IMG/VR virus record: IMGVR_UViG_3300026512_000002
Location: 124,001-188,000 of that record
Direction: 5' to 3' (one strand)
Length of the DNA: 64,000 nucleotides
Shown here: positions 3,078 through 59,985 of the stretch, piece after piece
Layout: every line of letters begins with the position of its first letter
Position numbering within the stretch: the stretch's first letter is position 1
Position numbers and translations under genes: made by a program
Notes under the pieces: generated by a model
Seen by the model: only the letters and a program-made list of their open reading frames with translations
The model's database searches: none
Told to the model about the DNA's origin: nothing

Positions 3078-3216
3078 AACAGTACCTATAGTTGTTTATA
3101 TAAGTGTTATTGTTAAAATGTTTCTAATGTAAAATAATCAACATTATTTTTAAACAATATTCAGTATATTTTCTATTTTTTTTTATAAAACATATATATA
3201 AGAATATGGAGGGTAT

Positions 3217-4056
3217 ATGATATTTAATACAGTTAAACCTATAAAAAATGAAAACAGTGCTATCACGATTAAAACTAATACTAGTTTTGGGTACTATGGT
3301 TCAAGTAAAAATGTGACTGTTGTTAATGAGAAAGGTTTAAGCGATGAGCTTAATGACAAATTAAATGGTAGTGACAATGTTGATGATACTACTAAACCTG
3401 ATAACAAACAGAAAAAACAACCTCAAACACAAGAATCTGATAAGCCTGATGATAAACAGGTGGAACAACCTCAAACACAAGAATCTGATAATAATGATAA
3501 TGATGATACTGGTTTAAGTGATGAGTTAGATAACAAGTTGGAAAATACTAAAGTTGCCGATAAACAGAACAATCAATCTCAAGCACAAGAACCTAATGTT
3601 ACTCCTGCTATATCGAATGATAATGATACTAAGAACCAAGTTAGTGGTAATTCTAGTACTAATAACGAACCTGTTAAAACAGAAGTTGATATTAAAAAAG
3701 ATAAAATTAGGAAAAAATTACTATTTGATAAATTTGTAAACATGCGAGATGCTATTAACAAATTGTCTTTAAAAATGAGTATTTTTAGAAATAGAAACGA
3801 TATTAACATAGAACGTAACGCCCAGGCTTTTAAATATATTGTCACTAAAGTAGATAATATGAAAACTAATATAGATATGGTTATATTGCATAGATATGGT
3901 ATGATGGATAATGGTAAATTAATGTTATTATACAATTCCATGACAACACAGTTTTTAATATTATCTGAAATGTTCTTAAGTTTATTCGTATCAGATGATG
4001 TCAAAAAAGAAATATCAACGATACGAAAAATACGTAAAAATCTAAAAAGTAGTTAA
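3217..4056 (+). CDS. Probable scaffold / prohead core protein with a low-complexity acidic middle
   Basis: Immediately upstream of the capsid gene; internal repeats QPQTQESD x2 and GLSDEL.[DN]KL x2; helical C-terminal domain; AACA-N6-TA upstream. Confidence 0.45.
   Translation: MIFNTVKPIKNENSAITIKTNTSFGYYGSSKNVTVVNEKGLSDELNDKLNGSDNVDDTTKPDNKQKKQPQTQESDKPDDKQVEQPQTQESDNNDNDDTGLSDELDNKLENTKVADKQNNQSQAQEPNVTPAISNDNDTKNQVSGNSSTNNEPVKTEVDIKKDKIRKKLLFDKFVNMRDAINKLSLKMSIFRNRNDINIERNAQAFKYIVTKVDNMKTNIDMVILHRYGMMDNGKLMLLYNSMTTQFLILSEMFLSLFVSDDVKKEISTIRKIRKNLKSS
3416..3491 (+). repeat. 28-bp intragenic direct repeat (aacaacctcaaacacaagaatctgataa)
   Basis: Copies at 3416-3443 and 3464-3491. Confidence 0.85.
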
Positions 4057-4064
4057 TATTACAT

Positions 4065-4076
4065 AACAATAGAATA
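4065..4076 (+). promoter_or_regulatory. Late promoter motif AACA-N6-TA (capsid gene; representative of about 16 copies)
   Basis: AACA-atagaa-TA, 57 nt before the capsid ATG; the same motif recurs before most structural genes. Confidence 0.75.
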
Positions 4077-4132
4077 AATTTATGTATAACTTAAATACAT
4101 GTATATTATGTTTATTTTTTTAGGAGAATAAT

Positions 4133-5938
4133 ATGGCTAGAGTAACGGTTGATAAAACTATACCAGCAGCACCAAGAGTTGAAGGAGCTAATGAGTATAT
4201 TAGGGAAGCTATCCATGGAATGAAAAGAGATTATAATGTTGATATGTTAACTGACTATGTTAATGTTAGCAGAAATAATCCAGAATTAATCAATGAGTAT
4301 ATCGATAGAATGGCGGGTAATTTGGACGTTGAAGATGTTGATATGATGAAAGTTAGTGCTAATAACCAAATGATAGATATGGTTACAGAATCAATGTTTG
4401 GTACTATCCAACCTATTGTATCTATGGTATTACCTATTTATCGTAAGTTTTTACCAAAACTTGTTGTTAAGCAGTCAATGCCTACACAACCAGCACCTGC
4501 ACCTACTTTTAAAATTCAGACAATGGAAGAAAAGTATGTTGATATTAGAGGAAAAGAGACAATTCTTAAAGAATATTTTAATGAAGAGTTTAAAAAAGAT
4601 CCATATACATTCGATACTGGGTTGCTTCCTATTTATAAGGATTTTTTACCTATTATAGCATTAGATGATTATAACCTTATTACAGCTAAAAGAAGTGATG
4701 GAACATATCATGCATCAACACCACTTGCTGCTCAATCTTGGTATGCTACTGAGTTAGCACCTAATGGTGTAACACCTCAAGATAGTTTGGGACCAAAATT
4801 ATATATCACTGAAGTTCAGATGGAATTAGGTATTGGAGCAGATGGTGCTGGCGCATATGACGCTACTAACAACGAAATTGTAACAGTTAGAGTTAATGCT
4901 ATTAAAAACCATGAAGGTACTATTTATGCTGATGTTGAATATGTTGCTGATAGTAGTTGGACAACTATGGTACCTAACCAACATTTAGCTGTTCCACAAG
5001 GTACTAAATTTAATGATATTATTATTGGTAAAGTTAACAATGTGACTGATCAAGTTACTATTACAACTGTTAACGATCAAGCTAACCTTGCACCAGTTGC
5101 TGGTGTTTTTAAAGCTGCTATTGTTTCAGCTAAATTCCAAGGACAAGTGTCTAATGAATTAAATAATGTTGTATCTCAAGCTAAACTTGAAATCAATCAT
5201 AAGGAATACACAGTTGGACATGGTGAACATGTTTCAACACCTACACCAATTGAATATATTAAAGATCTTAATGTTATGTATAGTATTGATGGTGCTTTAA
5301 AGTTAACTGATATTATGTCACATGCAATGGCTAATAGAACTGAACTTGAAGCATGGCATTTTCTTGGTAAATCATATGCTGAAAACAATATGGATCTTAG
5401 AGGTTTCCGTGGATGGTTTGATGTTTCACCTGATTCTAATTTTACAGGACTTCCAGTTCAATGGAAAGAAGAAATTAAAGAAATTATTGATAGAGTTGTT
5501 GTTACAATGACTAATGCTTCAGATCATAATATTGGTAAATTTGTTATTTATGGTAATATGATTGATATGAGTGTTATTAAAAATGTTAGTTGGGATGTTA
5601 GAGCTAATAGTGCTACTGAAATCGGTGGTGTTAAAACAGGATATTCTGTTGGTCAATATTTTGGTGCTGCTGGTAATTATGTTTTAGTTGCAAGTTCACA
5701 AATTCCTGATGGTGAAATCAGAATAGTTTACTACCCTGATGATTCAGAAATGTTAACTTATCAATATATGCCATACTCATTCAATATTGTTAATGATGCA
5801 GCATATAGAAATCCTCATGCACCAAACATTCCATCATTGGTTATGTTAAAAAGACATATCTTTGTTGAAGGTACACCTTATCAAGCAGTTATGGAAATTA
5901 AAAATAATACTGTTGATGGTACATTAACATATAGATAG
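4133..5938 (+). CDS. Major capsid protein (HK97 fold, T4 gp23-like), with N-terminal propeptide
   Basis: MVLPIYRKFLPKLVVKQSMPTQP matches the gp23-type start of the mature capsid. EYIKDLNVMYSIDG...LTDIMS matches the gp23 spine helix. Also YMPY near the C-terminus, strong RBS, biased codons, downstream terminator, and a candidate cleavage site VTE86|S. Confidence 0.85.
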   Translation: MARVTVDKTIPAAPRVEGANEYIREAIHGMKRDYNVDMLTDYVNVSRNNPELINEYIDRMAGNLDVEDVDMMKVSANNQMIDMVTESMFGTIQPIVSMVLPIYRKFLPKLVVKQSMPTQPAPAPTFKIQTMEEKYVDIRGKETILKEYFNEEFKKDPYTFDTGLLPIYKDFLPIIALDDYNLITAKRSDGTYHASTPLAAQSWYATELAPNGVTPQDSLGPKLYITEVQMELGIGADGAGAYDATNNEIVTVRVNAIKNHEGTIYADVEYVADSSWTTMVPNQHLAVPQGTKFNDIIIGKVNNVTDQVTITTVNDQANLAPVAGVFKAAIVSAKFQGQVSNELNNVVSQAKLEINHKEYTVGHGEHVSTPTPIEYIKDLNVMYSIDGALKLTDIMSHAMANRTELEAWHFLGKSYAENNMDLRGFRGWFDVSPDSNFTGLPVQWKEEIKEIIDRVVVTMTNASDHNIGKFVIYGNMIDMSVIKNVSWDVRANSATEIGGVKTGYSVGQYFGAAGNYVLVASSQIPDGEIRIVYYPDDSEMLTYQYMPYSFNIVNDAAYRNPHAPNIPSLVMLKRHIFVEGTPYQAVMEIKNNTVDGTLTYR

Positions 5939-5969
5939 AGGTATTATAATATAATTTAAAACCACATAT

Positions 5970-6007
5970 GGCTAATCATACTTTTTGTGTGATTAGCCTT
6001 TCTTTTT
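5970..6007 (+). terminator. Rho-independent terminator after the capsid gene
   Basis: GGCTAATCATAC-ttttt-GTGTGATTAGCC followed by a T-rich run. Confidence 0.85.
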
Positions 6008-6034
6008 CAATCACATTGTTAGGTGGGTGTTGAT

Positions 6035-6565: not shown

Positions 6566-6577
6566 GAGGTGCACTAT

Positions 6578-8491: not shown

Positions 8492-8556
8492 TGTGAAATA
8501 ACACATAAAAAACACCAACAACATTTAATTAATAGAATGTAAATGGAGGTTGTTGT

Positions 8557-9396
8557 ATGAATGATATTTATGATGAAATGATAGAGAAATATATCGATGG
8601 TGATATACATGATGAAAACATATATGAGTATGATGGTAACTTTGATCATGACACATTTATTCAAAATTTGGAAATCGTTATAGGAAACAGAATGTCTGTT
8701 GACAGTAATGATATAAAAGATTTGTTTAGAATAATTAGAAATAGGTATGAGTTTTTAACAAAGCAAATGAATTTTGATGATACAGTAGAGTTGGCTGATG
8801 CTAAAAACGAATATGATGCTTTTGTCGATATCATTATTGAAAAAATTATTGAATTTTATAAATTGGAATATAATGATGATAGTATTGTAACTAATATGTT
8901 TGAACGTGATGAATTGGCTAATGTGTTATATCATTTTTTTATTAAAGATTTTTCAGATAATATGATTATGTTATTTCATGGATATTTAATAGATAATGAG
9001 AATATGATATTAGATAAATTTGAAGTTTCATCTAAAGTGAAAGATGTGACCACTATATCTGTAAGAGAAAAAATTGGCAAGGATCCTGTTGCATTAGCAA
9101 CTGTTTTAAATATGAGTGAGCTTATAGATATTGCTATTGGTGAATTTATGTCAAATCCTTCACGTATAATTAAAGATATTGTCAATTATGATCCTGACGC
9201 ATATTATAATTATAAAATGAAAGAATATTTTAAAATTGATAATGATACCGATAACAATGATTTAGAAGCACCATTACTTAGTGTTGGATCTGAATTTGCT
9301 GAAGTATTTTTTAGCGTGTTAGATGATCAAGATATGAAATTAAAAATAACATCGGATTTAATAAACTTAATTATGGAAGAATTCCTTGAAATGTAA
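8557..9396 (+). CDS. Hypothetical acidic protein (late)
   Basis: RBS GGAGG; AACA-N6-TA at 8520-8531. Confidence 0.6.
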   Translation: MNDIYDEMIEKYIDGDIHDENIYEYDGNFDHDTFIQNLEIVIGNRMSVDSNDIKDLFRIIRNRYEFLTKQMNFDDTVELADAKNEYDAFVDIIIEKIIEFYKLEYNDDSIVTNMFERDELANVLYHFFIKDFSDNMIMLFHGYLIDNENMILDKFEVSSKVKDVTTISVREKIGKDPVALATVLNMSELIDIAIGEFMSNPSRIIKDIVNYDPDAYYNYKMKEYFKIDNDTDNNDLEAPLLSVGSEFAEVFFSVLDDQDMKLKITSDLINLIMEEFLEM

Positions 9397-11221: not shown

Positions 11222-11281
11222 TATACTACTATACCCTTAAATTCATATTTTATAAACAATTAATTAATTAGAGGGCAATAT

Positions 11282-15182: not shown

Positions 15183-16094
15183 ATGATTAAAGCAGGGAAT
15201 TATAAGCAAAGATATAATAAAGAAAAACTGCAGTTCATGTCACCGTTAACTATAGGTGCTATTAAAGGTATTTCAAATCCATTTGTGGGTGGTTATGCAT
15301 TTTTCTTATTCATTTATGTACCAGATCAAATTAGAGCATTAACATCAAACCTTATAGGTCCTGATGAAGACAGATTATCAGCAACTGTTGTTAGTCATGC
15401 TGATAGAGATTTTTTCGATTTATGTGAAAAGACAGTTAAAGAAGTTCAAGGTATTCAAGATTGGACACTTGAAGTAACACAATTTAATGGTGGTTTTACT
15501 GGTAAAAACCATGCTATACCTACTGTTATGACTGACAGTACCGAATCCATTTCATTAAAATTTCAAGAATTATCAGGTGGTGTATATGGTACACCTGTTC
15601 AACAATGGGCTACAGCTATCAGTGATCCTAAAACTGGTGTTTCAACATTACTTAAAAGAGACAGTGTTGCTGACTATAGTGTTGAAGCAATTTATATTGT
15701 GACATCACCAAACGTTGCATCACCATCTAGAAAAGGTAGAGCTGAATCTTTAGAAAAAGCATTTTTCTTTGACAGTATGTTTCCTAAAAATGTTCCGCTA
15801 TCACATTATAACTATACTGCTGGTAGTCATGACTTAACAGAATTGACATATGAGTTTAATGCTGAAATGCATGTTGGTGCAGCAATTGATAAAAGAGCCA
15901 TGGAAATTCTATCTAGTGATTTCTTTTATGAAAACTATATTGTTTCTGGTGAAAAATATATTGCTAACAGAGTTAATAATAATAAATCACAATTATTTGA
16001 TGCTGATAATGAAGCTTTCGATGTATGGGGCGATAATGCTCAAGATGGTAGTTTTATTATTCGTGACGATAGTGTTGGTGAATCTATAGAATAG
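15183..16094 (+). CDS. Tail tube protein
   Basis: Directly follows the sheath; ISLKFQE...VQQW...I.DP.TG, YIVTSP, MFPKNV and LTYEF pattern of myovirus tubes. Confidence 0.75.
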   Translation: MIKAGNYKQRYNKEKLQFMSPLTIGAIKGISNPFVGGYAFFLFIYVPDQIRALTSNLIGPDEDRLSATVVSHADRDFFDLCEKTVKEVQGIQDWTLEVTQFNGGFTGKNHAIPTVMTDSTESISLKFQELSGGVYGTPVQQWATAISDPKTGVSTLLKRDSVADYSVEAIYIVTSPNVASPSRKGRAESLEKAFFFDSMFPKNVPLSHYNYTAGSHDLTELTYEFNAEMHVGAAIDKRAMEILSSDFFYENYIVSGEKYIANRVNNNKSQLFDADNEAFDVWGDNAQDGSFIIRDDSVGESIE

Positions 16095-17529
16095 TTCTCA
16101 TAAATAAAAGTAATTCAAACATACCTTCATCTATATTCTTATTAAGTTCAAGATATTCTTTATTATCCATAACACTAGGTGTTATTTTAAACTCATTATA
16201 ATTAGGCAGTACCCAAAATTTATTATTCAAATAATTGGCTAAGTTCAATATAGGGTTTTTACGCTCCATTAATTTAGATTTAATAAAACTGTACTTTGTA
16301 TTAACCAAATCTTGATATATTTTAGTATTATTTAATCGTTCTATAAAAGTTTTTTTCACAATAGAACGTCTAGCTTCTATATCAACATCACTTATTAGAA
16401 CTTTATGTAAATACTTAAATCTTTTATGTTGGGATAATGATTTATATAACATACCTAACATAAGGATATAATCACCTTTATTAATATCATAATTGTATGT
16501 TTTTAAATAATTGCTATAAAATAATGTTACCAGAGTAATTTGGAACTGGGTTATAGTAACATATTTGTCAAGATATCTTAATTCCTCCTTAGTTATAAGC
16601 AAACCACTGTTTTTAAAATTTTTAAAAACTGCTTTTAATTTAGCAACTTTATGAATATCGTTTAATATTAATAAACCTTCATCTTTATGTTTTAGAGCAT
16701 TTTCAACTTTTTCATATGCAGTAACACCATCAGCATCCCTATTATATGATTTGCTAACAGAAAATTGGACATTAAAGTTTTCTCTAAACTTATATTCAAG
16801 TTGTTTTTTAATTGCAGCATGTAATAGTGGTATGGGTGATATTCTAACATCAATCTTGTATAGTATTAGTGTTAAAATTTTTTCATACACTTCTATTAAT
16901 ACAACATTTTGAGTACTATTAGTGTGCTTTAGATACTCCCACATATTAGTGTTGTTACCTTGACTCATCATGATTCTAGAATTGATAAATGCATATAGTT
17001 TAGGTATAATTAAATTATTATTAAACAACTCCATGATATGAACAAACATATTGTAGAAAACAGTGTTGTTTCCAGCAACATCATTGTTAGCAACATAGTC
17101 ACCTATAATAGGTATCGTTAACTTTATAACAAAACTGATTTTATGTAAATCTTGTATTTGTTGATTATTTATATATAGATCTTCATTTATAACATCTGAG
17201 CTTTCGTTATTAAAAGCAACTTCTGGTGATGGGTGATAATGCTCCCTAACATATAAATCGGCTATATCAACTATACCTTCGTTTAATATACGTTCTTTAA
17301 ACAATATTGAAAATTCTTCTTCTGGTAATTCCTTTAAAGTATAAAATTTTTTAAGAGCTATATACTTTTTAATTAAAAATGGATCTTTTTGAAAAGCATA
17401 TCTCATCGATTGCTTTATAAATGGCAACACTTTTATGAATCTTTTTTTCAAAATATCATAATCGTATTTTTCCCGTTCATTAACCTCTAATTGTACAATT
17501 CTATTTTCTGAATTAATTTTAACACCCAT
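16084..17529 (-). CDS. Probable sigma-like promoter-specificity subunit of the non-virion RNAP (AR9 gp226 / phiKZ gp68-like)
   Basis: About 480 aa and alpha-helical. IQDLHKISFVIKLTIPIIGDYV recalls the conserved L..lS...k...Pi.g.y block of this family. It lies three genes downstream of the chaperonin (AR9 gp226 and chaperonin gp228 are neighbours) and shares the TTGACA promoter class with the nvRNAP genes. Confidence 0.55.
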   Translation of the reverse strand: MGVKINSENRIVQLEVNEREKYDYDILKKRFIKVLPFIKQSMRYAFQKDPFLIKKYIALKKFYTLKELPEEEFSILFKERILNEGIVDIADLYVREHYHPSPEVAFNNESSDVINEDLYINNQQIQDLHKISFVIKLTIPIIGDYVANNDVAGNNTVFYNMFVHIMELFNNNLIIPKLYAFINSRIMMSQGNNTNMWEYLKHTNSTQNVVLIEVYEKILTLILYKIDVRISPIPLLHAAIKKQLEYKFRENFNVQFSVSKSYNRDADGVTAYEKVENALKHKDEGLLILNDIHKVAKLKAVFKNFKNSGLLITKEELRYLDKYVTITQFQITLVTLFYSNYLKTYNYDINKGDYILMLGMLYKSLSQHKRFKYLHKVLISDVDIEARRSIVKKTFIERLNNTKIYQDLVNTKYSFIKSKLMERKNPILNLANYLNNKFWVLPNYNEFKITPSVMDNKEYLELNKNIDEGMFELLLFMRTIL

Positions 17530-18301: not shown

Positions 18302-18331
18302 ATTATAACGACTATGTGTATAAAATGTCAA
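18302..18331 (-). promoter_or_regulatory. Consensus sigma70/sigmaA-type promoter
   Basis: Minus strand TTGACA-N18-TATAAT upstream of 18274. Confidence 0.75.
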
Positions 18332-19225: not shown

Positions 19226-19319
19226 AATTCATCCTATATATTGTTTATATTTTTGTTAACATATGTGTTATGATAGATGTGTTTAAATAATTTGTTTGAT
19301 TTGAATTTTTAATTAATAG

Positions 19320-22771: not shown

Positions 22772-22792
22772 ATCACATACTCCTTTAAGATG

Positions 22793-23203
22793 TTATATTG
22801 TTTTATGTATAAATGCACTAATACCATTAGATATATTATTGTTGAATCTAAAATCAACCCCATATTGTGTAATATCATCTTTTACGTTATATACGATGCT
22901 CATTATAACCAAACCATTAATATTATCATCTTTTTTTATCGATATCGTAACTGTTCTCAATATTGGGATCTCATCCAAAAAAATATTAGAGATACTTCTA
23001 CTCAGTTCATCTAACACATCGTTTGTCAAGGTATTAAATTGATAATCTTGCAACCCTATACCGATAGAGCTAAACGGATATGCTTCACCAGCTAAAACTA
23101 TTATTATATGATACATTTGCACTAATGCTGTTTTAGCATGATTCAGAATGATACTGTTACCGTAATCATCTACATCTAGTGTCAATTCATTGTAAATATT
23201 CAT
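22793..23203 (-). CDS. Baseplate wedge / sheath-initiator protein (gp25-like)
   Basis: 136 aa; II...GEAYPF.SIGIGL.DYQF resembles the gp25 motif G.rpf.p.fG.gl..ylF. Confidence 0.65.
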   Translation of the reverse strand: MNIYNELTLDVDDYGNSIILNHAKTALVQMYHIIIVLAGEAYPFSSIGIGLQDYQFNTLTNDVLDELSRSISNIFLDEIPILRTVTISIKKDDNINGLVIMSIVYNVKDDITQYGVDFRFNNNISNGISAFIHKTI

Positions 23204-25636: not shown

Positions 25637-25683
25637 TACAAATCCCTATATATACTTATTATATTGTTTTAAAGGTATTTTTC

Positions 25684-27519
25684 TTATTCGTATAATGATT
25701 CTATCATTGACGGTTTTTTATTCATATAGAAACGAGGATCATCTAATTGTTTTTTCAATTTCTCAAAACTGAAGCCAACAAACTGAGATTTGGTTTTAAT
25801 AGCTTCTGATAATCTTAATATACTATAGTCGTCAACAGTTATGTCTGGACTACTTAAATCTATATCACGATATATGTCACCACTATCCCTAATCATCATA
25901 CTGACTAACAATTCAACATGTGAGCTAACAATATCAATACCGTTCAATTCTATTAATTGTAGCAAATTGTTATAGTATGTCGAAAAATCTCCATCTAATA
26001 AATCGTTTTTACGATCAAATAAATATAACAACATATCTAGTGATTCTGATATTTCTTGATTATGAACTATAAATGTGAAAACAATTTTATTTAAAGTATC
26101 ACCGGTTATCACAATATCTTCATGTTCTATTGTGTCAAATTGGATATTTGCTGTTAATTTGACTGGTAAAACTATTTCCTCTTCAACATCTCCATTATGT
26201 AATGAGATAGTCATTGATACAATTTCCATGTGTTCTCGGCCTCTAGCAACATCTTCATTTGTAATAGTTATTGTGAAATCATTGTTATTTGGTATGATGG
26301 TATTATTATCTATATTGAAGTTATTTTTAATGATATCCGGCCATTCAATTTCATTAACATTAATCTTAGACATATGTTTGGTAGACAATATTGTTTGTGT
26401 AAACGGCTCCGTAGTACTTAAAGTTGAAACTATACCAACATGATAATCTTTTGTAACTTCATACATTTTCTTATTACCAAAACATTTTGAGCATACTTTA
26501 TTTTTTGTTTTGTAAGCACATGTGATAGGTGATCTAACACCAACAGTTGTGCCTATTAAATCGGTATCATCCATAGTAATATGTTTATCGGTACCTATAA
26601 TATTCTTACCAACTATTGTTTTTAAAATGTTCTCATTTTTCACAAAAATGTTTAAAGGCGTTTCACTACCACAATCACCATAAATAATACTCTCAGTATC
26701 CAATGATAATAGCTCAAATTTCCTTGTTAAATAACCAGCCTTACTAGTACCACCGAATATTAATATTGCGGCTTTACGAGCTGTTTCTGATGCTATATAT
26801 AAATCGCTAGCTGATCTCAGTCCACGTATAAGGGAAGTATTAACAGGTGTCGGTATAACACCCCCCATCATATTGGTTTTGAAACCTTCAACTAAAAAGG
26901 TCTCTTGCAACTGTTTAGGTTTGATACCAACACCACTATGGAGAAAATTCTTTAAACAAGTATCTTCGCTGTTTAAAATACTCAACATTCTATCTAACGC
27001 TATTTTAATTTTCTTTTCAGCTGTGTCTACAGGTTCGTTTGGATCTATATGATAGTCTAGTAGTTTTTTAAATTCTTTATTTCTAAAAGATAAATGTATT
27101 ATATCATATATATTTATAGTTGAACCTATATAGGTATTGGCTTTAGCTGCTAAAGTAGTCAATTCTTGTATTGCTTCTGCTATCAGTTTCTTAACAATAT
27201 ATCTATCTATATCTAAATCTAATAATGGTTGAAGTATATTTTGATCAATATGTTTATCCAATTCTTTAACAGTTGTATCTGTCATAATATTTGTATCAGA
27301 TATACTGATATTGAAATATATAAATGGTTTTAATATTATTAAATTCACATAGTATTGTGATTCTGTTAATTCTAATGTAACATTTTCATTTATTTTTACA
27401 GATACGATGTTGTTCCTTGTTTTAAAATCAATCTGTTTTAAAAATGATTTTATAGTTAGCGTGTACTCATCGTACGTGTCAAACATTAATGATTTTTCGA
27501 TTGGTTTACTGGTAGACAT
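25684..27519 (-). CDS. RNA polymerase beta' subunit, C-terminal half (probable non-virion RNAP)
   Basis: Bridge helix ETARKA...SKAGYLTRKF, DCGS, Zn site VRSPITC...VCSKCFG, trigger loop VGIVS...TEPFTQTILSTKH, SHVELLV and FSFEK; start at 27519 with GGAGG RBS. Confidence 0.92.
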   Translation of the reverse strand: MSTSKPIEKSLMFDTYDEYTLTIKSFLKQIDFKTRNNIVSVKINENVTLELTESQYYVNLIILKPFIYFNISISDTNIMTDTTVKELDKHIDQNILQPLLDLDIDRYIVKKLIAEAIQELTTLAAKANTYIGSTINIYDIIHLSFRNKEFKKLLDYHIDPNEPVDTAEKKIKIALDRMLSILNSEDTCLKNFLHSGVGIKPKQLQETFLVEGFKTNMMGGVIPTPVNTSLIRGLRSASDLYIASETARKAAILIFGGTSKAGYLTRKFELLSLDTESIIYGDCGSETPLNIFVKNENILKTIVGKNIIGTDKHITMDDTDLIGTTVGVRSPITCAYKTKNKVCSKCFGNKKMYEVTKDYHVGIVSTLSTTEPFTQTILSTKHMSKINVNEIEWPDIIKNNFNIDNNTIIPNNNDFTITITNEDVARGREHMEIVSMTISLHNGDVEEEIVLPVKLTANIQFDTIEHEDIVITGDTLNKIVFTFIVHNQEISESLDMLLYLFDRKNDLLDGDFSTYYNNLLQLIELNGIDIVSSHVELLVSMMIRDSGDIYRDIDLSSPDITVDDYSILRLSEAIKTKSQFVGFSFEKLKKQLDDPRFYMNKKPSMIESLYE

Positions 27520-27546: not shown

Positions 27547-27576
27547 ATTAAATCATATTGTACTACTAAATGTCAA
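27547..27576 (-). promoter_or_regulatory. sigma70-like promoter upstream of beta'-C
   Basis: Minus strand TTGACA-N18-TTTAAT with TG at the extended -10 position. Confidence 0.5.
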
Positions 27577-27964: not shown

Positions 27965-28050
27965 TGTTAACCTCATAAATACATTTATTAATGTAGTGTT
28001 TATCTAGCAATAACCAATGAGGACAATAATATAAATAATGTGGAGATATC

Positions 28051-36565: not shown

Positions 36566-36595
36566 TTGACATGTTTCTATATGATATGTTAACAT
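36566..36595 (+). promoter_or_regulatory. sigma70-like promoter upstream of RNAP beta-N
   Basis: TTGACA-N18-TAACAT with TG extension. Confidence 0.55.
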
Positions 36596-36622: not shown

Positions 36623-38179
36623 ATGAAACATGTTAACAACATTTACAAACTTATTCAAGACGATGTGTCTAAACGAGAACCGTTTAATAACGATTTTTTA
36701 AAATTAAAAGCTAACGATAACTTATTACAATATATTGACGTTATAGCTGGTACTCTTGAAAAAATTGATGGTATAACATATTTGGGTTCAGAGATACGTC
36801 CTGAAAAAGAAGTTATTGAGAGCAGGAAGTTTAAAAATATAGAAGAATCTAGATTGATATTGATAAATCTTAAATTCAGAATCAGAGGTGTTATAGATCA
36901 GAATAAAGAATATAAAGAAGAAGAATATACTTTACCATTATTTTTCTTTAAATTGATTAATGATAATTATTTTATATACAACGGTGTTAAGTATGTTCCT
37001 ATATATCAAATAGTTGACAAATTCTATAAATTAAACAATGTCTTAGTTCTTAAAACTTTAATGATGGGTGTTTTTTTACGTGGTAATAAAACATCTATAG
37101 AATCAATGACAGGGGCAATATACAATGGTCGTGAATATAAAATACATCTGTTTAAAAAGAAAATACCAACATTGCTTTATTACTTAGCTAAATTTGGAAT
37201 GGCTAAAACATTAGAGTTTTTTGATTTAACAACCGATGATATTAAAATATTACATAGTAAAAATAATGCTGCAGAATACAATGAAGCTTTAATAAATCAA
37301 AATATAGATGTGTTTGAATTGCAAAAAAATACATATTTGTTAGTTAAAAAAGACAGTATAACAGATCAACTTAAAACCGATGTGGTTATATCTCTACACA
37401 CTCTTTTTTCTAAAATGCCTAAATTTAGATATAGTTCTCTTAAATCACCTGACTATTATTTTAAGAAATTCACTAACTCGTTTACAACTAATCCAAATAA
37501 TACTAAAAAAGGTGAAAAAGTTCTAATTTCTTTTGAAAAAATATTTGATGAACAAACAAAATTTGTGTTAAACATAGACGATAAAGACAAAGAAGATGTT
37601 TATCATATTGTAAAATGGATGATGAAAAATTTTAATAAATTGATGAAACAAGACAATATGGATTTAGGTAATAAGAGATTGCGTTTCTATGAATATATGC
37701 TTATACCACTTATAGTTAAATTTAACAGTTCTAACAATAGATTGTTTAATGATAAAGGTACTGTGACATTTAGTCAACTTCAAACTATATTTAAAAGAAT
37801 TAGTCCTAGTTTTTTATTGAAATCAATTATATCTAGTAATAGTTCAACCATATCAGAATTAATACGTTATGATAACACATCGTTCAACAACATTGATCTG
37901 TTTAGTATGCTTAAAGCGTCTATTAAAGGCCCACAATCTATAGCTAGTAAAGGTGCTAGTGGTAGAACGGAAATACCACTAAGATATAGAAACATACATC
38001 CAAGTTACCTAGGTAGAGTTTCTATAACATATGCTCCTAGTAACGATCCAGGTTTAAATTTCATATTAACACCTTTTGTAGAAGTTGATGATAGAATGTA
38101 TTTTAAAAAATTAAGACCTGAATTACAAGAAGAAGTTGATAAACTGTCATCAAATGTAGGTGAAATAATAAATGTATAA
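36623..38179 (+). CDS. RNA polymerase beta subunit, N-terminal part (probable non-virion RNAP)
   Basis: YFIYNGVKYVPIYQ (cf. FIING.ERV...Q), NKRLR, GPQS, and RNIHPSYLGRV....PSNDPGL (cf. RDVHPSHYGR.CP.ETPEG.N.GL). Confidence 0.88.
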   Translation: MKHVNNIYKLIQDDVSKREPFNNDFLKLKANDNLLQYIDVIAGTLEKIDGITYLGSEIRPEKEVIESRKFKNIEESRLILINLKFRIRGVIDQNKEYKEEEYTLPLFFFKLINDNYFIYNGVKYVPIYQIVDKFYKLNNVLVLKTLMMGVFLRGNKTSIESMTGAIYNGREYKIHLFKKKIPTLLYYLAKFGMAKTLEFFDLTTDDIKILHSKNNAAEYNEALINQNIDVFELQKNTYLLVKKDSITDQLKTDVVISLHTLFSKMPKFRYSSLKSPDYYFKKFTNSFTTNPNNTKKGEKVLISFEKIFDEQTKFVLNIDDKDKEDVYHIVKWMMKNFNKLMKQDNMDLGNKRLRFYEYMLIPLIVKFNSSNNRLFNDKGTVTFSQLQTIFKRISPSFLLKSIISSNSSTISELIRYDNTSFNNIDLFSMLKASIKGPQSIASKGASGRTEIPLRYRNIHPSYLGRVSITYAPSNDPGLNFILTPFVEVDDRMYFKKLRPELQEEVDKLSSNVGEIINV

Positions 38180-38262
38180 AAAATATATATAAACAATCAC
38201 ATCTCATACCCTACTCTGTTTTTTGTAAAACAACTATATAATATTTATAATCAAGGAATTGT

Positions 38263-42510: not shown

Positions 42511-42552
42511 GTCAAATCTCCTATATAATTATTTAATTGTTAATACTTGATA

Positions 42553-46547: not shown

Positions 46548-46632
46548 ATAACCTCTATTGTATAATATTTATACTATTGTTTATAAAAAAAAATAACAGG
46601 GATGTGTGTGTAATATTTTTAATTATCTATAG

Positions 46633-47259: not shown

Positions 47260-47363
47260 AATCTCTCCTCATATTACACACACACAAATATAATATATTA
47301 TCGAATATATTGTTAAATAATAGTATGTATAACAATGTATTAAAGATAAATATAGGATTCAAT

Positions 47364-51899: not shown

Positions 51900-51932
51900 T
51901 AAACAATATATTAAAAACTATAAGGTGATACT

Positions 51933-52697
51933 ATGAATAATGATATTGAACATGCAACAGATATTAAAAAAATTGATAAAGTCATATTAGACGAACTCAA
52001 TGAACAAGTATCGGAAAATTTAATAGAAGTTGTTAATATACTAGATGATATTGGGTATCTTTATGAAGAATATCAAAACAGTGTTAGTGAAAGTGAGTTT
52101 ATTGATAAAACTTCTAAAAAAATCAACTCATATGGTATTAATAATAAAACATATGTTGAATTAGCTAAATATATTGAAAAAAGATATAATGATATTAGAA
52201 ACCTAGATGATTTATTAATACTTGAAAAAGAACTATCGGCTTTACATAAAGCAACATTGGATGTTTTGAAACAAGTTGATGATAAAACACGTGAAATATT
52301 AAGTAAACAAAATAAGAAAATACCTAATGCTGTTAATAAAAGTAGTATTATACAGGGTGCGTTAATAAGTGCTAGTGCTGCTATATTGAATAAAGAAAGA
52401 TTAATGAAATTAGCATTGTCCACAATGAGTGGTAGTGTCGGTAGTGCATTTTTTTTATATACCTCAAGTAGAGGTATTGTGCGTAGTATGAAAGGTTTAA
52501 AAAAAATGGTCAATATAATGTCAAAAACAAATAATATACCAGATACAAGAAAATCGTTAATGCTAATTGCTAGAACATATAAACTATTAAAAAATATAGA
52601 ATCGCATACAAAAAAAAATGAAAAACCAAATATAGGTGAATATAAAAACATGGTCAATATTGATAATAATTATGAGTTTAAAAAATCAAGAGTTTAA
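51933..52697 (+). CDS. Late protein with an acidic propeptide-like N-terminus and a hydrophobic hairpin
   Basis: AACA-N6-TA at 51902-51913; IIQGALISASAAIL and ALSTMSGSVGSAFFLY. Confidence 0.55.
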   Translation: MNNDIEHATDIKKIDKVILDELNEQVSENLIEVVNILDDIGYLYEEYQNSVSESEFIDKTSKKINSYGINNKTYVELAKYIEKRYNDIRNLDDLLILEKELSALHKATLDVLKQVDDKTREILSKQNKKIPNAVNKSSIIQGALISASAAILNKERLMKLALSTMSGSVGSAFFLYTSSRGIVRSMKGLKKMVNIMSKTNNIPDTRKSLMLIARTYKLLKNIESHTKKNEKPNIGEYKNMVNIDNNYEFKKSRV

Positions 52698-55400: not shown

Positions 55401-55462
55401 CATTACACTAATAAGATCATGTTAATTAACAATGGATTAAATAACTATTATAAGGACACATA

Positions 55463-56278
55463 ATGTATACAGAATCAAATATAGAAACATTATCTAATAC
55501 CATATTAAAAGAATCATCAATAGCTAGATCTACTTTTAATGTGTTAACACCAACTATAGATTATAAAGCACTACATAGCTATAATTCAGCTTTAGTTGAG
55601 CCTAGTCAAGGTGTTTTGGATAGAACAGTAGAAGCTATTATGCGCTTTATTGAAAATATTGTTAAAAAAATGAATAATTTATGGTTCAATAGAGCTAAAT
55701 TTGTTAAAAACAATGAGCGTATAATAGTAAATGGGTATGATAAAATGATGGGTGATAGAGATGTTGTTGTTAGATTGGAACCTATAAATGTAGTGAATCG
55801 TAAATATATAAAAGATTTACGCAATCTACGAAATCGTATCTTGAAACAAGTTGATCGTAAATTTATAGTCGGTCATAATTTACCTAGAAACTTTAATAGT
55901 GTATCTGTAAGACGAATTGAGTTTATGGATATTATGACTAGAATCAACGAATACCCACTTTCTATAGAACCTCAAGATTGGATCGATTTCATAGATCATA
56001 TAAAAAGGTTTTATAGAAGTGATTTAGAGAATATTGAAAATGGTAAAAAAGAAATTATGTTAAGATATAAATATATTAGACATGAAGTTGAAACAGGTGA
56101 ACGAACAATACTAGCTTTGCCAAAAGCTAAACAACCAACTGTTGATAAAACAGTTACACTTATAAGATCTAAATTGAGTTTAATTATGGACATTTATAAT
56201 GCTGAACTAGAAGCATTGGAACATATGTATCTTGCCATGTATAGAGCATTGAGAATATTTTATGATTATGGTAAGTGA
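55463..56278 (+). CDS. Internal head protein family member
   Basis: Late promoter at 55428-55439; GVLDRTVEAIMRFIENIVKKM...FVKNNERIIVNG similar to 42553 and 58530. Confidence 0.55.
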   Translation: MYTESNIETLSNTILKESSIARSTFNVLTPTIDYKALHSYNSALVEPSQGVLDRTVEAIMRFIENIVKKMNNLWFNRAKFVKNNERIIVNGYDKMMGDRDVVVRLEPINVVNRKYIKDLRNLRNRILKQVDRKFIVGHNLPRNFNSVSVRRIEFMDIMTRINEYPLSIEPQDWIDFIDHIKRFYRSDLENIENGKKEIMLRYKYIRHEVETGERTILALPKAKQPTVDKTVTLIRSKLSLIMDIYNAELEALEHMYLAMYRALRIFYDYGK

Positions 56279-57256: not shown

Positions 57257-57275
57257 ATCATACCCCATATTTTTA

Positions 57276-58520
57276 TTACAATCTAATAGCTGTATTATCG
57301 ATTTGTTTATTTTTATTTTTAACAACTTTAGCTATAGCATTTCTCAAATTAGCTATTGTTGGATCAGTACTATCGAGAACATATTCAACTATTTTATTAA
57401 ACCTATTATCAACTAAATCATACAAACTAGTTAATACACTGCCTTGATAACTAGATGCTTTTTGCACATAATTAACATAACTAGTTAATAACCTCGCACC
57501 AGTTTCACCTGATTCAGCTTTTTTAGTAGCATCTTTTTTATTATTAATTCTCACATTGGTAATAGCTTTATCACCAGTTTTTTTAAAAAACTTTTCTTTC
57601 GCAGCATATATCTGCCTACGCATTTCTATTGTTGATAATGTTTTATTATTTCTAATTTTCATTTCAATATCAGTTGGTAATTCAACATCATCAACAGTTT
57701 CCTGTTTCTTAGCATACTTCTTACCATGTGCTAATAACTTATCATAACCTATTTCTAAGTTTTCCATACTTTTTGGTAGCTCAGTAAAAATCTTACTCAT
57801 ATTAGTATAAAATTGACTGATACGTACACCATTCAACTTGTTATATCTTGCTTTACCAATACCTGTGAATTCACTGAGAATATTTTTACCAGTAGCAACA
57901 CTTTTTATAGGTGTTGTAAAATTACATAATTTTTTAGTAACAATTACCAGTTCAGCACCACTATAGTTTGTAAAGTTATTTTTATCAGTAGCTTTAGTTT
58001 TAGCTTCCGTGACTAATTTATAATTAGCTGATAATGTTTTTTTCATATCAGTTAAATTCATATCACCTATCATATATAATGGATTAGCATCATTTAATAT
58101 TTTAGAAGTTAGTTTGGACATAGTATCGTAATCATACTCTTTTAAAAACTTAATATATTCGCCACCTATTTCAGAATACACATCTTGTTTCAACAACGAA
58201 ACCTCACCTTGACTTTTTATCACTTTTAGTTGCTCAATATTATTACTTAATATTTCAGCAGTATTGGTTCTAGCAGCAGCTTTGTTAGCACCTTTACCAA
58301 ATATTGCTTTGATAGCATCAAGAATGAGTTTAAAACTATTACCCACACCGCTATCTCCAGTAATATCCCCTATAGTTTCTATCACAACATTATCTAAATA
58401 TTCCTTCAGATCCTCAAATTGTTCTAACAAATTTATAATATCAGCAGATTCTTGTGTTTTTTGCTCTATAAACAATAATTCATCATTAAGCTGATCATAT
58501 AACGTATTGTACATATTCAT
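57276..58520 (-). CDS. Internal head protein family member
   Basis: Acidic N-terminus, VIE|T, amphipathic SFKLILDAIKAIFG, basic body. Confidence 0.55.
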   Translation of the reverse strand: MNMYNTLYDQLNDELLFIEQKTQESADIINLLEQFEDLKEYLDNVVIETIGDITGDSGVGNSFKLILDAIKAIFGKGANKAAARTNTAEILSNNIEQLKVIKSQGEVSLLKQDVYSEIGGEYIKFLKEYDYDTMSKLTSKILNDANPLYMIGDMNLTDMKKTLSANYKLVTEAKTKATDKNNFTNYSGAELVIVTKKLCNFTTPIKSVATGKNILSEFTGIGKARYNKLNGVRISQFYTNMSKIFTELPKSMENLEIGYDKLLAHGKKYAKKQETVDDVELPTDIEMKIRNNKTLSTIEMRRQIYAAKEKFFKKTGDKAITNVRINNKKDATKKAESGETGARLLTSYVNYVQKASSYQGSVLTSLYDLVDNRFNKIVEYVLDSTDPTIANLRNAIAKVVKNKNKQIDNTAIRL

Positions 58521-58529
58521 ACCACACCC

Positions 58530-59387
58530 CTATTTTGAATCTTCGGCAATAACATTATCCTTTTTCATTTCCTTAGTTTTAAAAGATTTAGCTGTTTCAA
58601 ACAATTTTACATATTCCATAGCTATAGCAATCGCAACAGTATCAATAGTCTTGGAAACAATAAATATTGATTTTAAAAACAATATAACCTGTTTCACCAA
58701 CTTATTTACATCTGGTAAATGCTCATTACTACTTATATCCATGTTTTTTAACATAGGTATATTTTTATGTATACTAGAAATAAAATCATTCATATCATTA
58801 ACACTGTCACCTAGACCATTAGTAATATCTACTAACGTAATAACATATTTTCTCAATTCTGAGGATTTATCGATAACTTTATTAGTTACACTACATATAT
58901 TACCAACATGCTTAGAAATCTCTTTGGTTGATAATTTCTTTTTATCATTAAGTAGTTCTTTAATAATATCAGTATATTTGTCAACATCAGTGTTTTTCAA
59001 TGCATCAAGAGTAATATTTTTTACAAACTTATCCAGTGATTCTGTTAGATCGGAAGCGACTTTTAATAAATCATCTAATCTATCGATATTAACAATTAAT
59101 GTATCCTTGTCCATCTTTTTTAATCCCAATATAATATTACTTTTATTAGTTTTGATAAACTTACATTTCTGTTCAAATTTACTATATTCTTCACCACTAT
59201 CTTTAAAAGTTTTTTTAATGTCATTAAACACTTTTTCAATACCTGATAAGAAACTTCTAAATAATGCTGGTGATACGCTTTCAAGAGTGACATTTTCAAG
59301 CAACATTACCCTATTAACATTAGTAGTGTATGTGTTGGCCAATCTTTGTAATTCTAAAATACTTTCATCAAATATAAAATTATGCAT
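58530..59387 (-). CDS. Internal head protein family member
   Basis: AGGAG RBS; late promoter at 59415-59426; TLE|S...FRSFLSGIEKVF...IKTNKSNIILGLKK. Confidence 0.55.
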   Translation of the reverse strand: MHNFIFDESILELQRLANTYTTNVNRVMLLENVTLESVSPALFRSFLSGIEKVFNDIKKTFKDSGEEYSKFEQKCKFIKTNKSNIILGLKKMDKDTLIVNIDRLDDLLKVASDLTESLDKFVKNITLDALKNTDVDKYTDIIKELLNDKKKLSTKEISKHVGNICSVTNKVIDKSSELRKYVITLVDITNGLGDSVNDMNDFISSIHKNIPMLKNMDISSNEHLPDVNKLVKQVILFLKSIFIVSKTIDTVAIAIAMEYVKLFETAKSFKTKEMKKDNVIAEDSK

Positions 59388-59553
59388 TTTATGTTCTCCT
59401 TAAACCTATTAATTTAATATATTGTTAAACTTAAAAAAAATGAAACTATGATATATTATAAACTAAACTTGTTTTCATTAATATATTATGATAATGTGTC
59501 TCAAATTAATCTTATCCCATATTGATAAGATTAAACAACTAATAGGAGGAATT

Positions 59554-59877
59554 ATGATTGATCGAGCATTAGTCAAACATCATGCTAGTGATGCTATTTT
59601 ATTCAACATTGAACATTTTGAATCTTATATCGGATATTTACAATATAAGGATAAATGTATGATTATACCAATTACCATTGACGAATTTAAGAAACAACTG
59701 TGCGACTATAATGATGATTGCGGTTTATTAAAATTTAACAATTTAGAAGAACTAAAAAAAAGCGATATGTTTTTACATCAAAATAAATCGGATCAGTATT
59801 ATATAGATACGATGTTTGCTCGTAGTAGTATATATGATATATTTATAGATAAAGGTACTATACTCATACATAAGTAA
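59554..59877 (+). CDS. Hypothetical protein
   Basis: AGGAGGA RBS before ATG 59554. Confidence 0.6.
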   Translation: MIDRALVKHHASDAILFNIEHFESYIGYLQYKDKCMIIPITIDEFKKQLCDYNDDCGLLKFNNLEELKKSDMFLHQNKSDQYYIDTMFARSSIYDIFIDKGTILIHK

Positions 59878-59985
59878 ATTATCTTTCAACAAAATGTGTT
59901 ATAAGATAATAGTTGAGTATATTATAACAAACATTAAATTACATAGTAAATATTATCTAAATTAACATATTGTGAAGGAGATTCT

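What the first reader, a model, noticed from the sequence alone, without database searches (positions are those of the whole stretch)
3097..59941. Genome-wide AACA-N6-TA motif upstream of structural genes, matching the AR9-type late promoter (uracil-dependent in AR9)
Seen: exact AACA-N6-TA, correctly oriented and within about 60 nt of a start, at 3097-3108(-), 3189-3200(+), 4065-4076(+), 8520-8531(+), 11255-11266(+), 19246-19257(-), 25657-25668(-), 27989-28000(-), 38229-38240(+), 42530-42541(-), 46570-46581(-), 47331-47342(+), 51902-51913(+), 55428-55439(+), 59415-59426(-) and 59930-59941(+). Near-variants occur at 22791-22802(-) and 28022-28033(+). Rough chance is about 0.1% per position, so this is clearly enriched. 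Known: Bacillus phage AR9 late promoters have this consensus, and its nvRNAP reads deoxyuridines in the template strand. Inference: this phage uses the same late regulon and may have dU-substituted DNA.
Basis: partly seen in the sequence, partly recalled or inferred. Interest (0 to 1): 0.7.

Follow-up and report, generated by a model that had tools for sequence, protein, structure and literature searches.

The report
AR9-type late promoters, probably thymine DNA
This 228-kb phage genome from a hydrothermal-vent metagenome carries about 40 late promoters of the kind read by the Bacillus phage AR9's own RNA polymerase, but its genes indicate ordinary thymine DNA, not the uracil DNA that AR9's enzyme needs.

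Summary

The motif is not enriched across the window as a whole (130 found, 127 expected). It is strongly enriched by position and orientation. Genome-wide there are 36 sites 10-35 nt before starts, against 4.0±2.0 simulated and 3-18 at other spacings. Anchoring on a proximal TAA gives AACA at -11..-8 in 39 cases against 2.8 expected.

The real motif is longer: AACA-W-t-n-n-W-W-T-A(+1)-A(+2). The A at +2 is present in 35 of 36 sites, although it was never part of the search pattern.

The genome encodes homologues of all five AR9 nvRNAP subunits, including the promoter-specificity subunit gp226. So the 'same late regulon' reading is supported.

The dU inference is not supported:
- The genome encodes ThyX, dTMP kinase and a dUTPase.
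- It lacks the dCMP deaminase, deoxyribonucleotidase and Ugi of AR9.
- Five known or presumed dU relatives have no ThyA, ThyX, dUTPase or Tmk.
- The gp226 valine that excludes thymine in AR9 is an asparagine here.

Transcription start sites could not be mapped, because no RNA data exist for this genome.

The parts
3097..3108 (-). Late promoter AACACTTATATA|aac, 19 nt before the head-maturation protease gene 2253-3077(-), an AR9 g114 homologue
   Evidence: (PWM 13.1)
3189..3200 (+). Late promoter AACATATATATA|aga, 16 nt before 3217-4056(+), function unknown. It is divergent from the promoter at 3097-3108.
4065..4076 (+). Late promoter AACAATAGAATA|aat, 56 nt before the major capsid gene 4133-5938(+), an AR9 g117 homologue. 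AR9 g117 also has the motif, 36 nt upstream.
8520..8531 (+). Late promoter AACATTTAATTA|ata, 25 nt before 8557-9396(+), function unknown
11255..11266 (+). Late promoter AACAATTAATTA|att, 15 nt before the virion-protein gene 11282-12013 (g125-like). The tail sheath gene 12033-15128 and the g127-like gene 15183-16094 follow.
19246..19257 (-). Late promoter AACAAAAATATA|aac, 20 nt before 18608-19225(-). The relative L013 has AACAACACAATA|aac at the orthologous position.
25657..25668 (-). Late promoter AACAATATAATA|agt, 20 nt before the 806-aa gene 23216-25636(-)
   Evidence: (PWM 16.0)
27989..28000 (-). Late promoter AACACTACATTA|ata, 24 nt before the virion-protein gene 27587-27964(-), g153-like. 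AR9 g153 has the motif too.
38229..38240 (+). Late promoter AACAACTATATA|ata, 22 nt before 38263-39660(+)
42530..42541 (-). Late promoter AACAATTAAATA|att, 19 nt before 41434-42510(-)
   Evidence: (PWM 16.6)
46570..46581 (-). Late promoter AACAATAGTATA|aat, 22 nt before the virion structural gene 44793-46547(-), g214-like
47331..47342 (+). Late promoter AACAATGTATTA|aag, 21 nt before the virion structural gene 47364-49076(+), g213-like. The g212-like gene 49092-51899 follows.
51902..51913 (+). Late promoter AACAATATATTA|aaa, 19 nt before 51933-52697(+)
55428..55439 (+). Late promoter AACAATGGATTA|aat, 23 nt before 55463-56278(+)
59415..59426 (-). Late promoter AACAATATATTA|aat, 27 nt before the ATG ORF 58530-59387(-)
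59930..59941 (+). Weaker candidate AACATTAAATTA|cat (C at +2), 44 nt before 59986-61098(+), g220-like
   Evidence: PWM score below 11.
22791..22802 (-). One-mismatch variant AACAATATAACA (C at -1), 19 nt before 21350-22771(-). Doubtful.
28022..28033 (+). One-mismatch variant GACAATAATATA|aat, 17 nt before 28051-28761(+), which is followed by the virion-RNAP beta'N-like gene 28781-30382. AR9 g145 has a late motif.
16084..17529 (-). Homologue of AR9 gp226, the sigma-like promoter-specificity subunit of the nvRNAP. Asn195 stands at the position of AR9 Val206.
25684..27519 (-). nvRNAP beta' C-terminal subunit (AR9 g154 homologue, 31% identity)
36623..38179 (+). nvRNAP beta N-terminal subunit (AR9 g105 homologue, 38% identity). 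Arg363 of the -10U pocket is kept (Arg377); Lys375 is Gln389.
18302..18331 (-). Perfect sigma70-type promoter TTGACA-N18-TATAAT, 27 nt before the g227-like/gp226-like operon
27547..27576 (-). TTGACA-N18-TTTAAT with TGn, 27 nt before the nvRNAP beta'C gene
36566..36595 (+). TTGACA-N18-TAACAT with TGn, 27 nt before the nvRNAP betaN gene

Best explanation
The motif is the late-promoter element of this phage's own non-virion multisubunit RNA polymerase (nvRNAP), the same kind of system as in Bacillus phage AR9.

Inferred sequence of events:
1. The genes for the four split beta/beta' subunits and for a gp226-like sigma-like subunit are expressed first. They are driven by sigma70-type TTGACA-N18-TAnnnT promoters.
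2. The assembled holoenzyme melts AT-rich DNA. By analogy with AR9, it reads the template-strand complement of AACA at -11..-8.
3. It starts at the A of the T-A step, here almost always as A-A (+1, +2). This gives leaders of about 16-27 nt that run straight into the Shine-Dalgarno sequence of capsid, protease, sheath-operon, other virion and unknown late genes.

Unlike AR9, the template is most probably thymine DNA. The phage makes dTMP (ThyX), phosphorylates it (Tmk) and destroys dUTP (Dut). The residue that sterically excludes the thymine methyl group in AR9 gp226 (Val206) is an asparagine here.

Shown: the motif, its position and orientation specificity, its extension, and the presence of the gene sets. 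Inferred: the TSS position, which enzyme reads the motif, the timing, and the DNA chemistry.
For: Motif statistics:
- 36 proximal sites against 4.0±2.0 simulated, and 3-18 at other spacings.
- AACA at -11..-8 of a proximal TAA in 39 cases against 2.8 expected (z 21); no one-mismatch 4-mer is enriched, and the peak is at N6.
- PWM score at or above 13: 39 hits genome-wide, 36 of them intergenic and 30 within 60 nt of a same-strand start.
- Positions outside the search pattern are conserved: A at +2 in 35/36, W at -3 and -2 in 36/36, A at +5 in 28/36.

Controls and relatives:
- AR9 run through the same pipeline gives 41 proximal sites at N6, against 0-18 at other spacings.
- The AR9 consensus and TSS are experimental (PMC5312081).
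- Five metagenomic relatives' contigs carry 11 proximal AACA-N6-TAA, against 0-5 at other spacings, over 92 annotated genes. One orthologous site is conserved.

Enzyme and target genes:
- All five nvRNAP subunit homologues are present, with g228-g227-g226 synteny.
- Motif-bearing genes are enriched for homologues of AR9 virion proteins: 11/15 against 9/34, Fisher p 0.004, using manual classes.
- The nvRNAP and DNA-polymerase genes lack the motif.

Thymine DNA:
- ThyX 122.6 bits, Tmk 160.8 bits and Dut 146.7 bits are all above curated cut-offs. The ThyX RHR-x2-S-x4-S-x-R motif and dUTPase motif V are intact.
- These enzymes are absent from five dU relatives.
- Val206 aligns to Asn in four independent alignments.
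Against: - No transcript data exist for this uncultured phage, so neither the TSS nor the late timing is shown.
- Promoter presence at individual orthologues is not correlated with AR9 (Fisher p 0.54).
- Half of the motif-bearing genes have no known function.
- All characterised members of the clade have dU DNA.
- In AR9, thymine at -11 is excluded by the conformation of the DNA itself, not by Val206. One substitution therefore does not explain T tolerance.
- Asn keeps a C-beta, so it might still clash with a 5-methyl group.
- The record is estimated 89% complete, so absences are not final.
Confidence: 0.72

Rival explanations
1. One reading: the same AR9-type late promoters, and the genome is dU-substituted, so recognition is uracil-dependent as in AR9.
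For: The phage belongs by protein similarity to the AR9 / PBS1 / phiR1-37 / S6 / LPJP1 group, whose characterised members have or are presumed to have dU DNA. The AACA element is as strictly required here as in AR9. In AR9, thymine at -11 or -10 of the template abolishes activity.
Against: ThyX, Tmk and a dUTPase with all motifs are encoded, and a dUTPase would remove the precursor needed for dU DNA. None of these enzymes, nor ThyA, occurs in five dU relatives. No dCMP deaminase, NT5C or Ugi homologue was found, whereas AR9 and the Staphylococcus jumbo phages carry a dCMP deaminase. Val206 is not conserved.
Confidence: 0.17
2. The conserved element is not a promoter. It would instead be a leader or processing signal, or the binding site of another regulator, placed at a fixed distance from the ribosome-binding site.
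For: The distance to the start codon is narrow (mostly 15-27 nt). No RNA 5' ends are available.
Against: The element matches an experimentally mapped promoter class in sequence, spacing and position. The cognate specificity subunit is encoded. The element often follows T-runs at the boundaries of transcription units and sits back-to-back in divergent intergenic regions, for example 3097/3189 and 46570/47331.
Confidence: 0.07
3. A chance product of AT-rich composition.
For: The whole-window count equals the shuffle expectation. AACA-N6-TA is short and the genome is 72% A+T.
Against: The orientation, position and spacing controls and the Markov simulations all reject chance. An unselected position (+2) is conserved in 35/36 sites.
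Confidence: 0.02

Closest known systems
Late promoters of Bacillus phage AR9 / PBS1, read by the gp226-containing nvRNAP (Lavysh 2017, PMC5312081; Sokolova 2017, PMC5449584; Fraser 2022, PMC9209446)
   Same: The AACA tetranucleotide, the 6-nt spacer and the T-A at the presumed start are the same. So are the position 15-30 nt before start codons of virion genes, the absence of the motif before nvRNAP and replication genes, and the five-subunit enzyme gene set with g228-g227-g226 synteny.
   Different: A at +2 is nearly invariant here (35/36) but not in AR9 (18/50), and leaders are about 5 nt shorter. gp226 is only 24% identical and has Asn in place of Val206. The genome carries ThyX, Tmk and Dut instead of dCMP deaminase, dNMPase and Ugi. 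The nvRNAP genes sit behind sigma70-type promoters rather than AR9-type early promoters.
Engineered AR9 gp226 V206G holoenzyme, which accepts thymine at -10 (PMC9209446)
   Same: A change at the same residue of the 2.1bis helix; the rest of the helix is kept (Trp208/Trp197, Tyr210/Tyr199).
   Different: Here the change is natural and to Asn, not Gly. Its effect is unknown, and the exclusion of thymine at -11 in AR9 does not depend on this residue.
phiKZ nvRNAP with gp68 and its TATG-type late promoters
   Same: A split beta/beta' phage RNAP with a distant sigma-like fifth subunit, acting on thymine DNA.
   Different: The promoter consensus differs (TATG, with G as the TSS). gp68 shares only its C-terminal domain fold with gp226. 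The protein here is a sequence-level homologue of gp226, not of gp68.

Membership tests
AR9-type late (nvRNAP) promoter | Consensus AACA-(6N)-T-A/G with a strict 6-nt spacing | tested here: met
   Spacing scan peaks at N6. AACA is required at all four positions: 39 cases against 2.8 expected, with no one-mismatch variant enriched.
AR9-type late (nvRNAP) promoter | Lies shortly upstream of late (virion) genes and is absent before nvRNAP and replication genes | tested here: met
   Virion-homologue enrichment p 0.004, using manual classes.
AR9-type late (nvRNAP) promoter | Transcription starts at the last A/G of the motif, late in infection | not testable with these tools
   The only runs holding the sequence are DNA assemblies of metagenomes; there are no RNA runs.
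AR9-type late (nvRNAP) promoter | A cognate five-subunit nvRNAP, including a gp226-like subunit, is encoded | tested here: met
   tblastn and BLASTP to AR9 g105, g089, g154, g270 and g226. PDB 7S01_A is hit at E 2e-14.
AR9-type late (nvRNAP) promoter | Recognition depends on deoxyuridine at -11 and -10 of the template strand | tested here: inconclusive
   Not measurable here. Indirect evidence points against it: Val206 is Asn and the thymidylate pathway is encoded.
gp226-like sigma-like specificity subunit | Sequence homology over the sigma2-like, finger and C-terminal regions | tested here: met
   BLASTP 24% identity over 314 residues, E 3e-19. HMMER match to 7S01_A over residues 57-443.
gp226-like sigma-like specificity subunit | 2.1bis helix D-x-V-(I/M)-W-x-(Y/F), with the valine invariant in the dU phages | tested here: not met
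   The window protein reads N-T-N-M-W-E-Y. Trp and Tyr are kept; Val is Asn and Asp is Asn. Across 147 family members this column is Val in 77 and other residues in 70.
dU-DNA jumbo phages (PBS1/AR9, phiR1-37, S6 group) | No thymidylate synthesis and no dUTP removal. In AR9 and the Staphylococcus jumbo phages, a dCMP deaminase and other dUTP-pool functions are present, and AR9/PBS2 has Ugi. | tested here: not met
   ThyX, Tmk and Dut are present. PF00383, PF06941 and an AR9 Ugi homologue are absent. Five relatives lack ThyA, ThyX, Dut and Tmk.
dU-DNA jumbo phages (PBS1/AR9, phiR1-37, S6 group) | Deoxyuridine replaces thymidine in virion DNA | not testable with these tools
   This needs nucleoside analysis or native-DNA sequencing of the phage.

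The most novel reading that the evidence does not exclude
This phage, and perhaps a large uncultured part of the gp226 family, runs AR9-style template-strand promoter recognition on ordinary thymine DNA. That would make it a natural thymine-tolerant version of an enzyme thought to be tied to uracil genomes. Residue 206 of the sigma-like subunit (Asn here; Val in only 77 of 147 family representatives) would be one of the adapting positions. The enzyme's own genes would be switched on from host-type sigma70 promoters rather than by an injected virion polymerase.
Probability: 0.55. Interest if true: 0.7.

Novelty: new variant of a known kind. Interest (0 to 1): 0.55.

Why it matters
AR9-type promoter recognition is currently presented as a uracil-dependent mechanism that lets dU phages tell their own DNA from the host's (PMC9209446; 2026 review PMC13282480).

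A close functional copy of the promoter and enzyme in a genome equipped to make dTTP and to destroy dUTP would show that the AACA template-strand mechanism is not intrinsically tied to uracil. It would provide a natural test case for how the -10 and -11 pockets accept a 5-methyl group. It would also warn against inferring dU DNA from the promoter motif or from nvRNAP homology alone.

On the practical side, the extended motif (AACA-N6-TAA about 20 nt before the start codon) gives a usable late-gene predictor for the many uncultured relatives. The family has 149 representatives at 50% identity.

Tried and rejected
- Megablast of 12 kb of the window against the phage collection found no match. 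The nearest cultured relatives are at only about 30% protein identity.
- The whole-window motif count against shuffles shows no enrichment, so 'enriched' holds only for oriented, start-proximal positions.
- RNA runs for TSS mapping: none. The only runs are the source hydrothermal-vent metagenome and one weak holder, both DNA contigs.
- Promoter presence compared orthologue by orthologue with AR9 is not correlated: 2x2 table 18/16/6/9, p 0.54.
- A covariation test between residue 206 and thymidylate genes across the family was not feasible. Four IMG/VR scans found no relatives, or the alignment was unusable. The metagenomic relatives sit on contigs of 3-94 kb, and tblastn with either protein finds only the cultured clade members, all six of those aligned having Val.
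- TTGACA as a plain word is only mildly over-represented and not strongly intergenic: 20 of 147 occurrences. The generic sigma70 scan is uninformative in this AT-rich DNA: 209 found against 175±13.5. Only the geometry-restricted subset is meaningful.
- The near-variants at 22791 and 28022 cannot be called functional, because one-mismatch tetramers are not enriched genome-wide.
- No UDG gene was found, so that argument is unavailable either way.
- Structure prediction and complex prediction were not run. They would not have reported residue-level contacts or given a verdict for protein-DNA complexes.

Full report
**Context.** The window is bases 124001-188000 of a single 227,696-bp contig with 27.9% G+C. 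IMG/VR classes the contig as a linear virus record, about 89% complete. The only sequencing run that fully holds it is a 2018 hydrothermal-vent metagenome.

The window has no near-identical relative in the phage collection. Its tail sheath is 30-34% identical to those of phiR1-37, the Staphylococcus jumbo phages (S6, PALS_2, MarsHill, Machias), AR9/PBS1, BpSp and Listeria phage LPJP1. PHROGs and tblastn against the AR9 genome (fetched) identify these genes in the window:
- a head protease, the major capsid protein and the large terminase;
- a g125-like virion protein, the sheath and a g127-like virion protein;
- a GroEL-like protein;
- g153-, g213- and g214-like virion proteins, and a virion-RNAP beta'N-like gene;
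- three of the five nvRNAP genes.

**The observation.** All 16 exact AACA-N6-TA sites are present at the stated coordinates and strands. Each lies upstream of a same-strand start codon. Fourteen are 15-27 nt away, the capsid promoter is 56 nt away, and the 59930 site is 44 nt away. The two near-variants each carry one mismatch.

The motif as written is weak. It occurs 130 times in the window, against 127±10 in dinucleotide shuffles. The real signal is positional:
- In oriented upstream intergenic DNA of the whole genome, N6 gives 66 hits, against 35-59 at other spacings and 25.5±4.9 in Markov simulations.
- Within 10-35 nt of a start codon it gives 36 hits, against 4.0±2.0 simulated (maximum 12) and 3-18 at spacings N2-N11.
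- In the window alone, the 72 nt upstream of 53 genes hold 21 hits, against 5.0±2.3 simulated, 4 on the antisense strand and 1 in the first 72 nt of genes.
- A blind scan of all 4-mer + gap + 2-mer words in the 70 nt before genes ranks AACA-N7-AA and AACA-N6-TA directly after Shine-Dalgarno and T-run words.
- Anchoring only on a TAA 12-40 nt before any start, the tetramer ten bases upstream is AACA in 39 cases against 2.8 expected (z 21). No other tetramer exceeds z 5, one-mismatch variants are not enriched, and the offset scan peaks at N6.

**The extended motif.** Aligning the 36 proximal sites shows conservation at positions that were not part of the search:
- A at +2 in 35/36;
- A or T at -3 and -2 in 36/36;
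- A at -7 in 25/36;
- A at +5 in 28/36.

A weight matrix from these sites, at a score of 13 or more, finds 39 places on both strands of the genome. Of these, 36 are intergenic (intergenic DNA is 9.6% of the genome) and 30 lie within 60 nt of a same-strand start. The matrix was trained on the proximal sites, so only the near-absence of coding hits is independent information.

**Comparison with AR9.** The AR9 late consensus is AACA-(6N)-TA/G with the last base as the TSS. It was found at 94 of 118 non-early TSSs (PMC5312081). Running my pipeline on the AR9 sequence gives the same picture: 41 proximal hits at N6, against 0-18 at other spacings, with a modal distance of 25-30 nt (15-25 nt here). 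In AR9, however, +2 is not conserved (A in 18/50).

Promoter presence is not conserved gene by gene (Fisher p 0.54). Both genomes do have the motif before the capsid, g125-, g153-, g213- and g214-like, portal and tape-measure genes, and both lack it before all nvRNAP and DNA-polymerase genes. Among genes with an AR9 homologue, motif-bearing genes are enriched for AR9 virion or morphogenesis proteins: 11/15 against 9/34, p 0.004. The classes were assigned by hand from the AR9 annotation.

**Metagenomic relatives.** Five metagenomic contigs encode gp226-like proteins at 30-47% identity. Using their independent gene calls, they carry 11 proximal AACA-N6-TAA, against 0-5 at other spacings, over 92 genes. 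In contig L013, the orthologue of window gene 18608-19225 keeps AACA-N6-TAA 21 nt before its ATG, although the spacer sequence has diverged.

**The enzyme.** tblastn with AR9 proteins finds homologues of all five nvRNAP subunits:
- g105 (beta N; 38% identity; window 36623-38179);
- g089 (beta C; genome 117705-119681);
- g154 (beta' C; window 25684-27519);
- g270 (beta' N; genome 96930-98258);
- gp226 (window 16084-17529; 24% identity over 314 residues, E 3e-19).

The gp226-like protein hits only PDB 7S01/7UM0/7UM1 chain A, which is AR9 gp226 (E 2e-14). The gene order GroEL-like, g227-like, gp226-like matches AR9 g228-g227-g226.

**The dU question.** Fraser et al. (PMC9209446) describe how AR9 discriminates uracil from thymine:
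- The -10 U sits in a pocket between gp226 Ile207 and gp105 Arg363.
- A 5-methyl group would clash with gp226 Val206.
- The V206G enzyme accepts thymine.
- The valine is invariant in gp226 homologues of dU phages.
- Thymine at -11 is excluded by the packing of the DNA backbone itself.

In BLASTP, two MAFFT alignments (10 and 147 sequences) and the HMMER alignment to 7S01_A, Val206 aligns with Asn195 of the window protein. Trp208, Tyr210 and gp105 Arg363 are kept, Ile207 is Met, and gp105 Lys375 is Gln. The closest homologue (P0002, 47% identity) and P0006 also have Asn. AR9, BpSp, LPJP1, Machias, S6 and phiR1-37 all have Val. Across 147 family representatives the column is Val in 77 and varied in the rest.

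Nucleotide metabolism points the same way. The genome encodes three relevant enzymes:
- ThyX (genome 190039-190668; TIGR02170, 122.6 bits against a cut-off of 87.9; RHR-x2-S-x4-S-x-R motif intact);
- an adjacent dTMP kinase (TIGR00041, 160.8 bits against 83.25);
- a dUTPase (genome 7890-8528; TIGR00576, 146.7 bits against 102.55; C-terminal GFGSTG motif present).

It has no ThyA, dCMP deaminase, NT5C-type nucleotidase or UDG, and no tblastn match to AR9 Ugi, g151 or g221. AR9, phiR1-37, S6, LPJP1 and Machias contain none of ThyA, ThyX, dUTPase or Tmk. AR9 and the Staphylococcus jumbo phages do carry a dCMP deaminase.

A phage that hydrolyses dUTP and makes dTMP and dTDP is expected to build thymine DNA. 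I put this at roughly 0.75-0.8. It is an inference from gene content, not a measurement.

**Mechanism.** The steps below are mine, and each is marked as shown or inferred.
1. The nvRNAP genes are transcribed from a different promoter class (shown as sequence; function inferred).
2. The five-subunit holoenzyme recognises the template complement of AACA at -11..-8 and starts at A(+1)A(+2) (by analogy with AR9).
3. Short leaders of 16-27 nt carry the Shine-Dalgarno sequence of late genes (shown as geometry).
4. Recognition works on thymine templates, with Asn195 as one adaptation (inferred). How thymine at -11 is tolerated is open.

**Other promoter classes, noticed in passing.** All five nvRNAP transcription units begin 25-27 nt after a TTGACA-N18-TAnnnT element. 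One of these is a perfect TTGACA-N18-TATAAT, three have a TGn extension, and several have upstream A-tracts. Only 11 of 204 genes have TTGACA in that geometry, so five out of five has a hypergeometric probability of about 2e-7. L013 has TTGATT-N17-TACAAT at the corresponding place.

In AR9 the same genes are driven by the virion RNAP's early promoters. The AR9 early consensus AAATATATATTAT also occurs here: 8 perfect copies, 6 of them intergenic, against about 1.3-1.5 expected. These lie mostly outside the window, and a one-mismatch copy with N6-G sits 21 nt before a DNA-polymerase gene. Homologues of the virion-RNAP genes g264, g145 and g078 are present, but none of g189 was detected.

**Verdict.** The dU inference is probably wrong.

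The system is a new variant of a known kind: AR9-type late promoters and enzyme in an uncultured vent phage whose genes predict thymine DNA. It differs from AR9 in the extended TAA start, the altered uracil-discriminating residue, and the host-type promoters before the polymerase genes.

Noticed in passing
window 18302-18331(-), 27547-27576(-), 36566-36595(+); genome 96875 and 117650: All five nvRNAP transcription units start 25-27 nt after a sigma70-type TTGACA-N18-TAnnnT promoter. One is a perfect consensus, three have a TGn extension, and several have A-tracts upstream. Only 11 of 204 genes have this geometry. This suggests that host RNAP, not an injected virion RNAP, switches on the nvRNAP genes, unlike in AR9.
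   Followed up: partly
genome 13.7 kb, 68-70 kb, 102.7 kb, 216.5 kb and 226.5 kb (outside the window): The AR9 early (virion-RNAP) consensus AAATATATATTAT occurs 8 times perfectly, 6 of them intergenic, against about 1.4 expected. ACATATATATTAT-N6-G lies 21 nt before a DNA-polymerase gene. The phage may therefore have a third, AR9-like early promoter class.
   Followed up: partly
genome 189381-190668 (2 kb past the window end) and genome 7890-8528: A tmk-thyX gene pair and a dUTPase with a 70-residue N-terminal extension are embedded among phage genes. These enzymes are absent from AR9, phiR1-37, S6, LPJP1 and Machias.
   Followed up: yes
window 58507-59403(+) and 58530-59387(-): Two long ORFs overlap on opposite strands. 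The late motif at 59415-59426(-), an ATG start and a Shine-Dalgarno sequence favour the minus-strand ORF. The TTG plus-strand ORF is probably spurious.
   Followed up: partly
whole genome against AR9 149146-155764: No homologue of the AR9 virion-RNAP beta N-terminal subunit (g189) was detected by tblastx, although g264-, g145- and g078-like genes are present. It may lie in the missing 11% of the genome, be too diverged to detect, or be absent.
   Followed up: no
protein family of window 16084-17529(-): The gp226-like family is far larger than the cultured dU phages suggest: 149 representatives at 50% identity in metagenomes. Trp208 is almost invariant (145/147), but the 'critical' Val206 column is Val in only 77 of 147.
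   Followed up: partly
genome 104.7-108.2 kb and 1.07-1.84 kb (outside the window): Extensive internal tandem repetition at 71-76% identity over about 3 kb, and at 88% identity over about 0.7 kb. Probably repeat-rich coding sequence.
   Followed up: no
window 9844-9855(+), 14421-14432(+), 40714-40725(-), 61080-61091(+): Additional motif copies lie inside genes or at gene ends. Two of them have high matrix scores. They could be internal late promoters of the kind reported for AR9, or chance matches.
   Followed up: no
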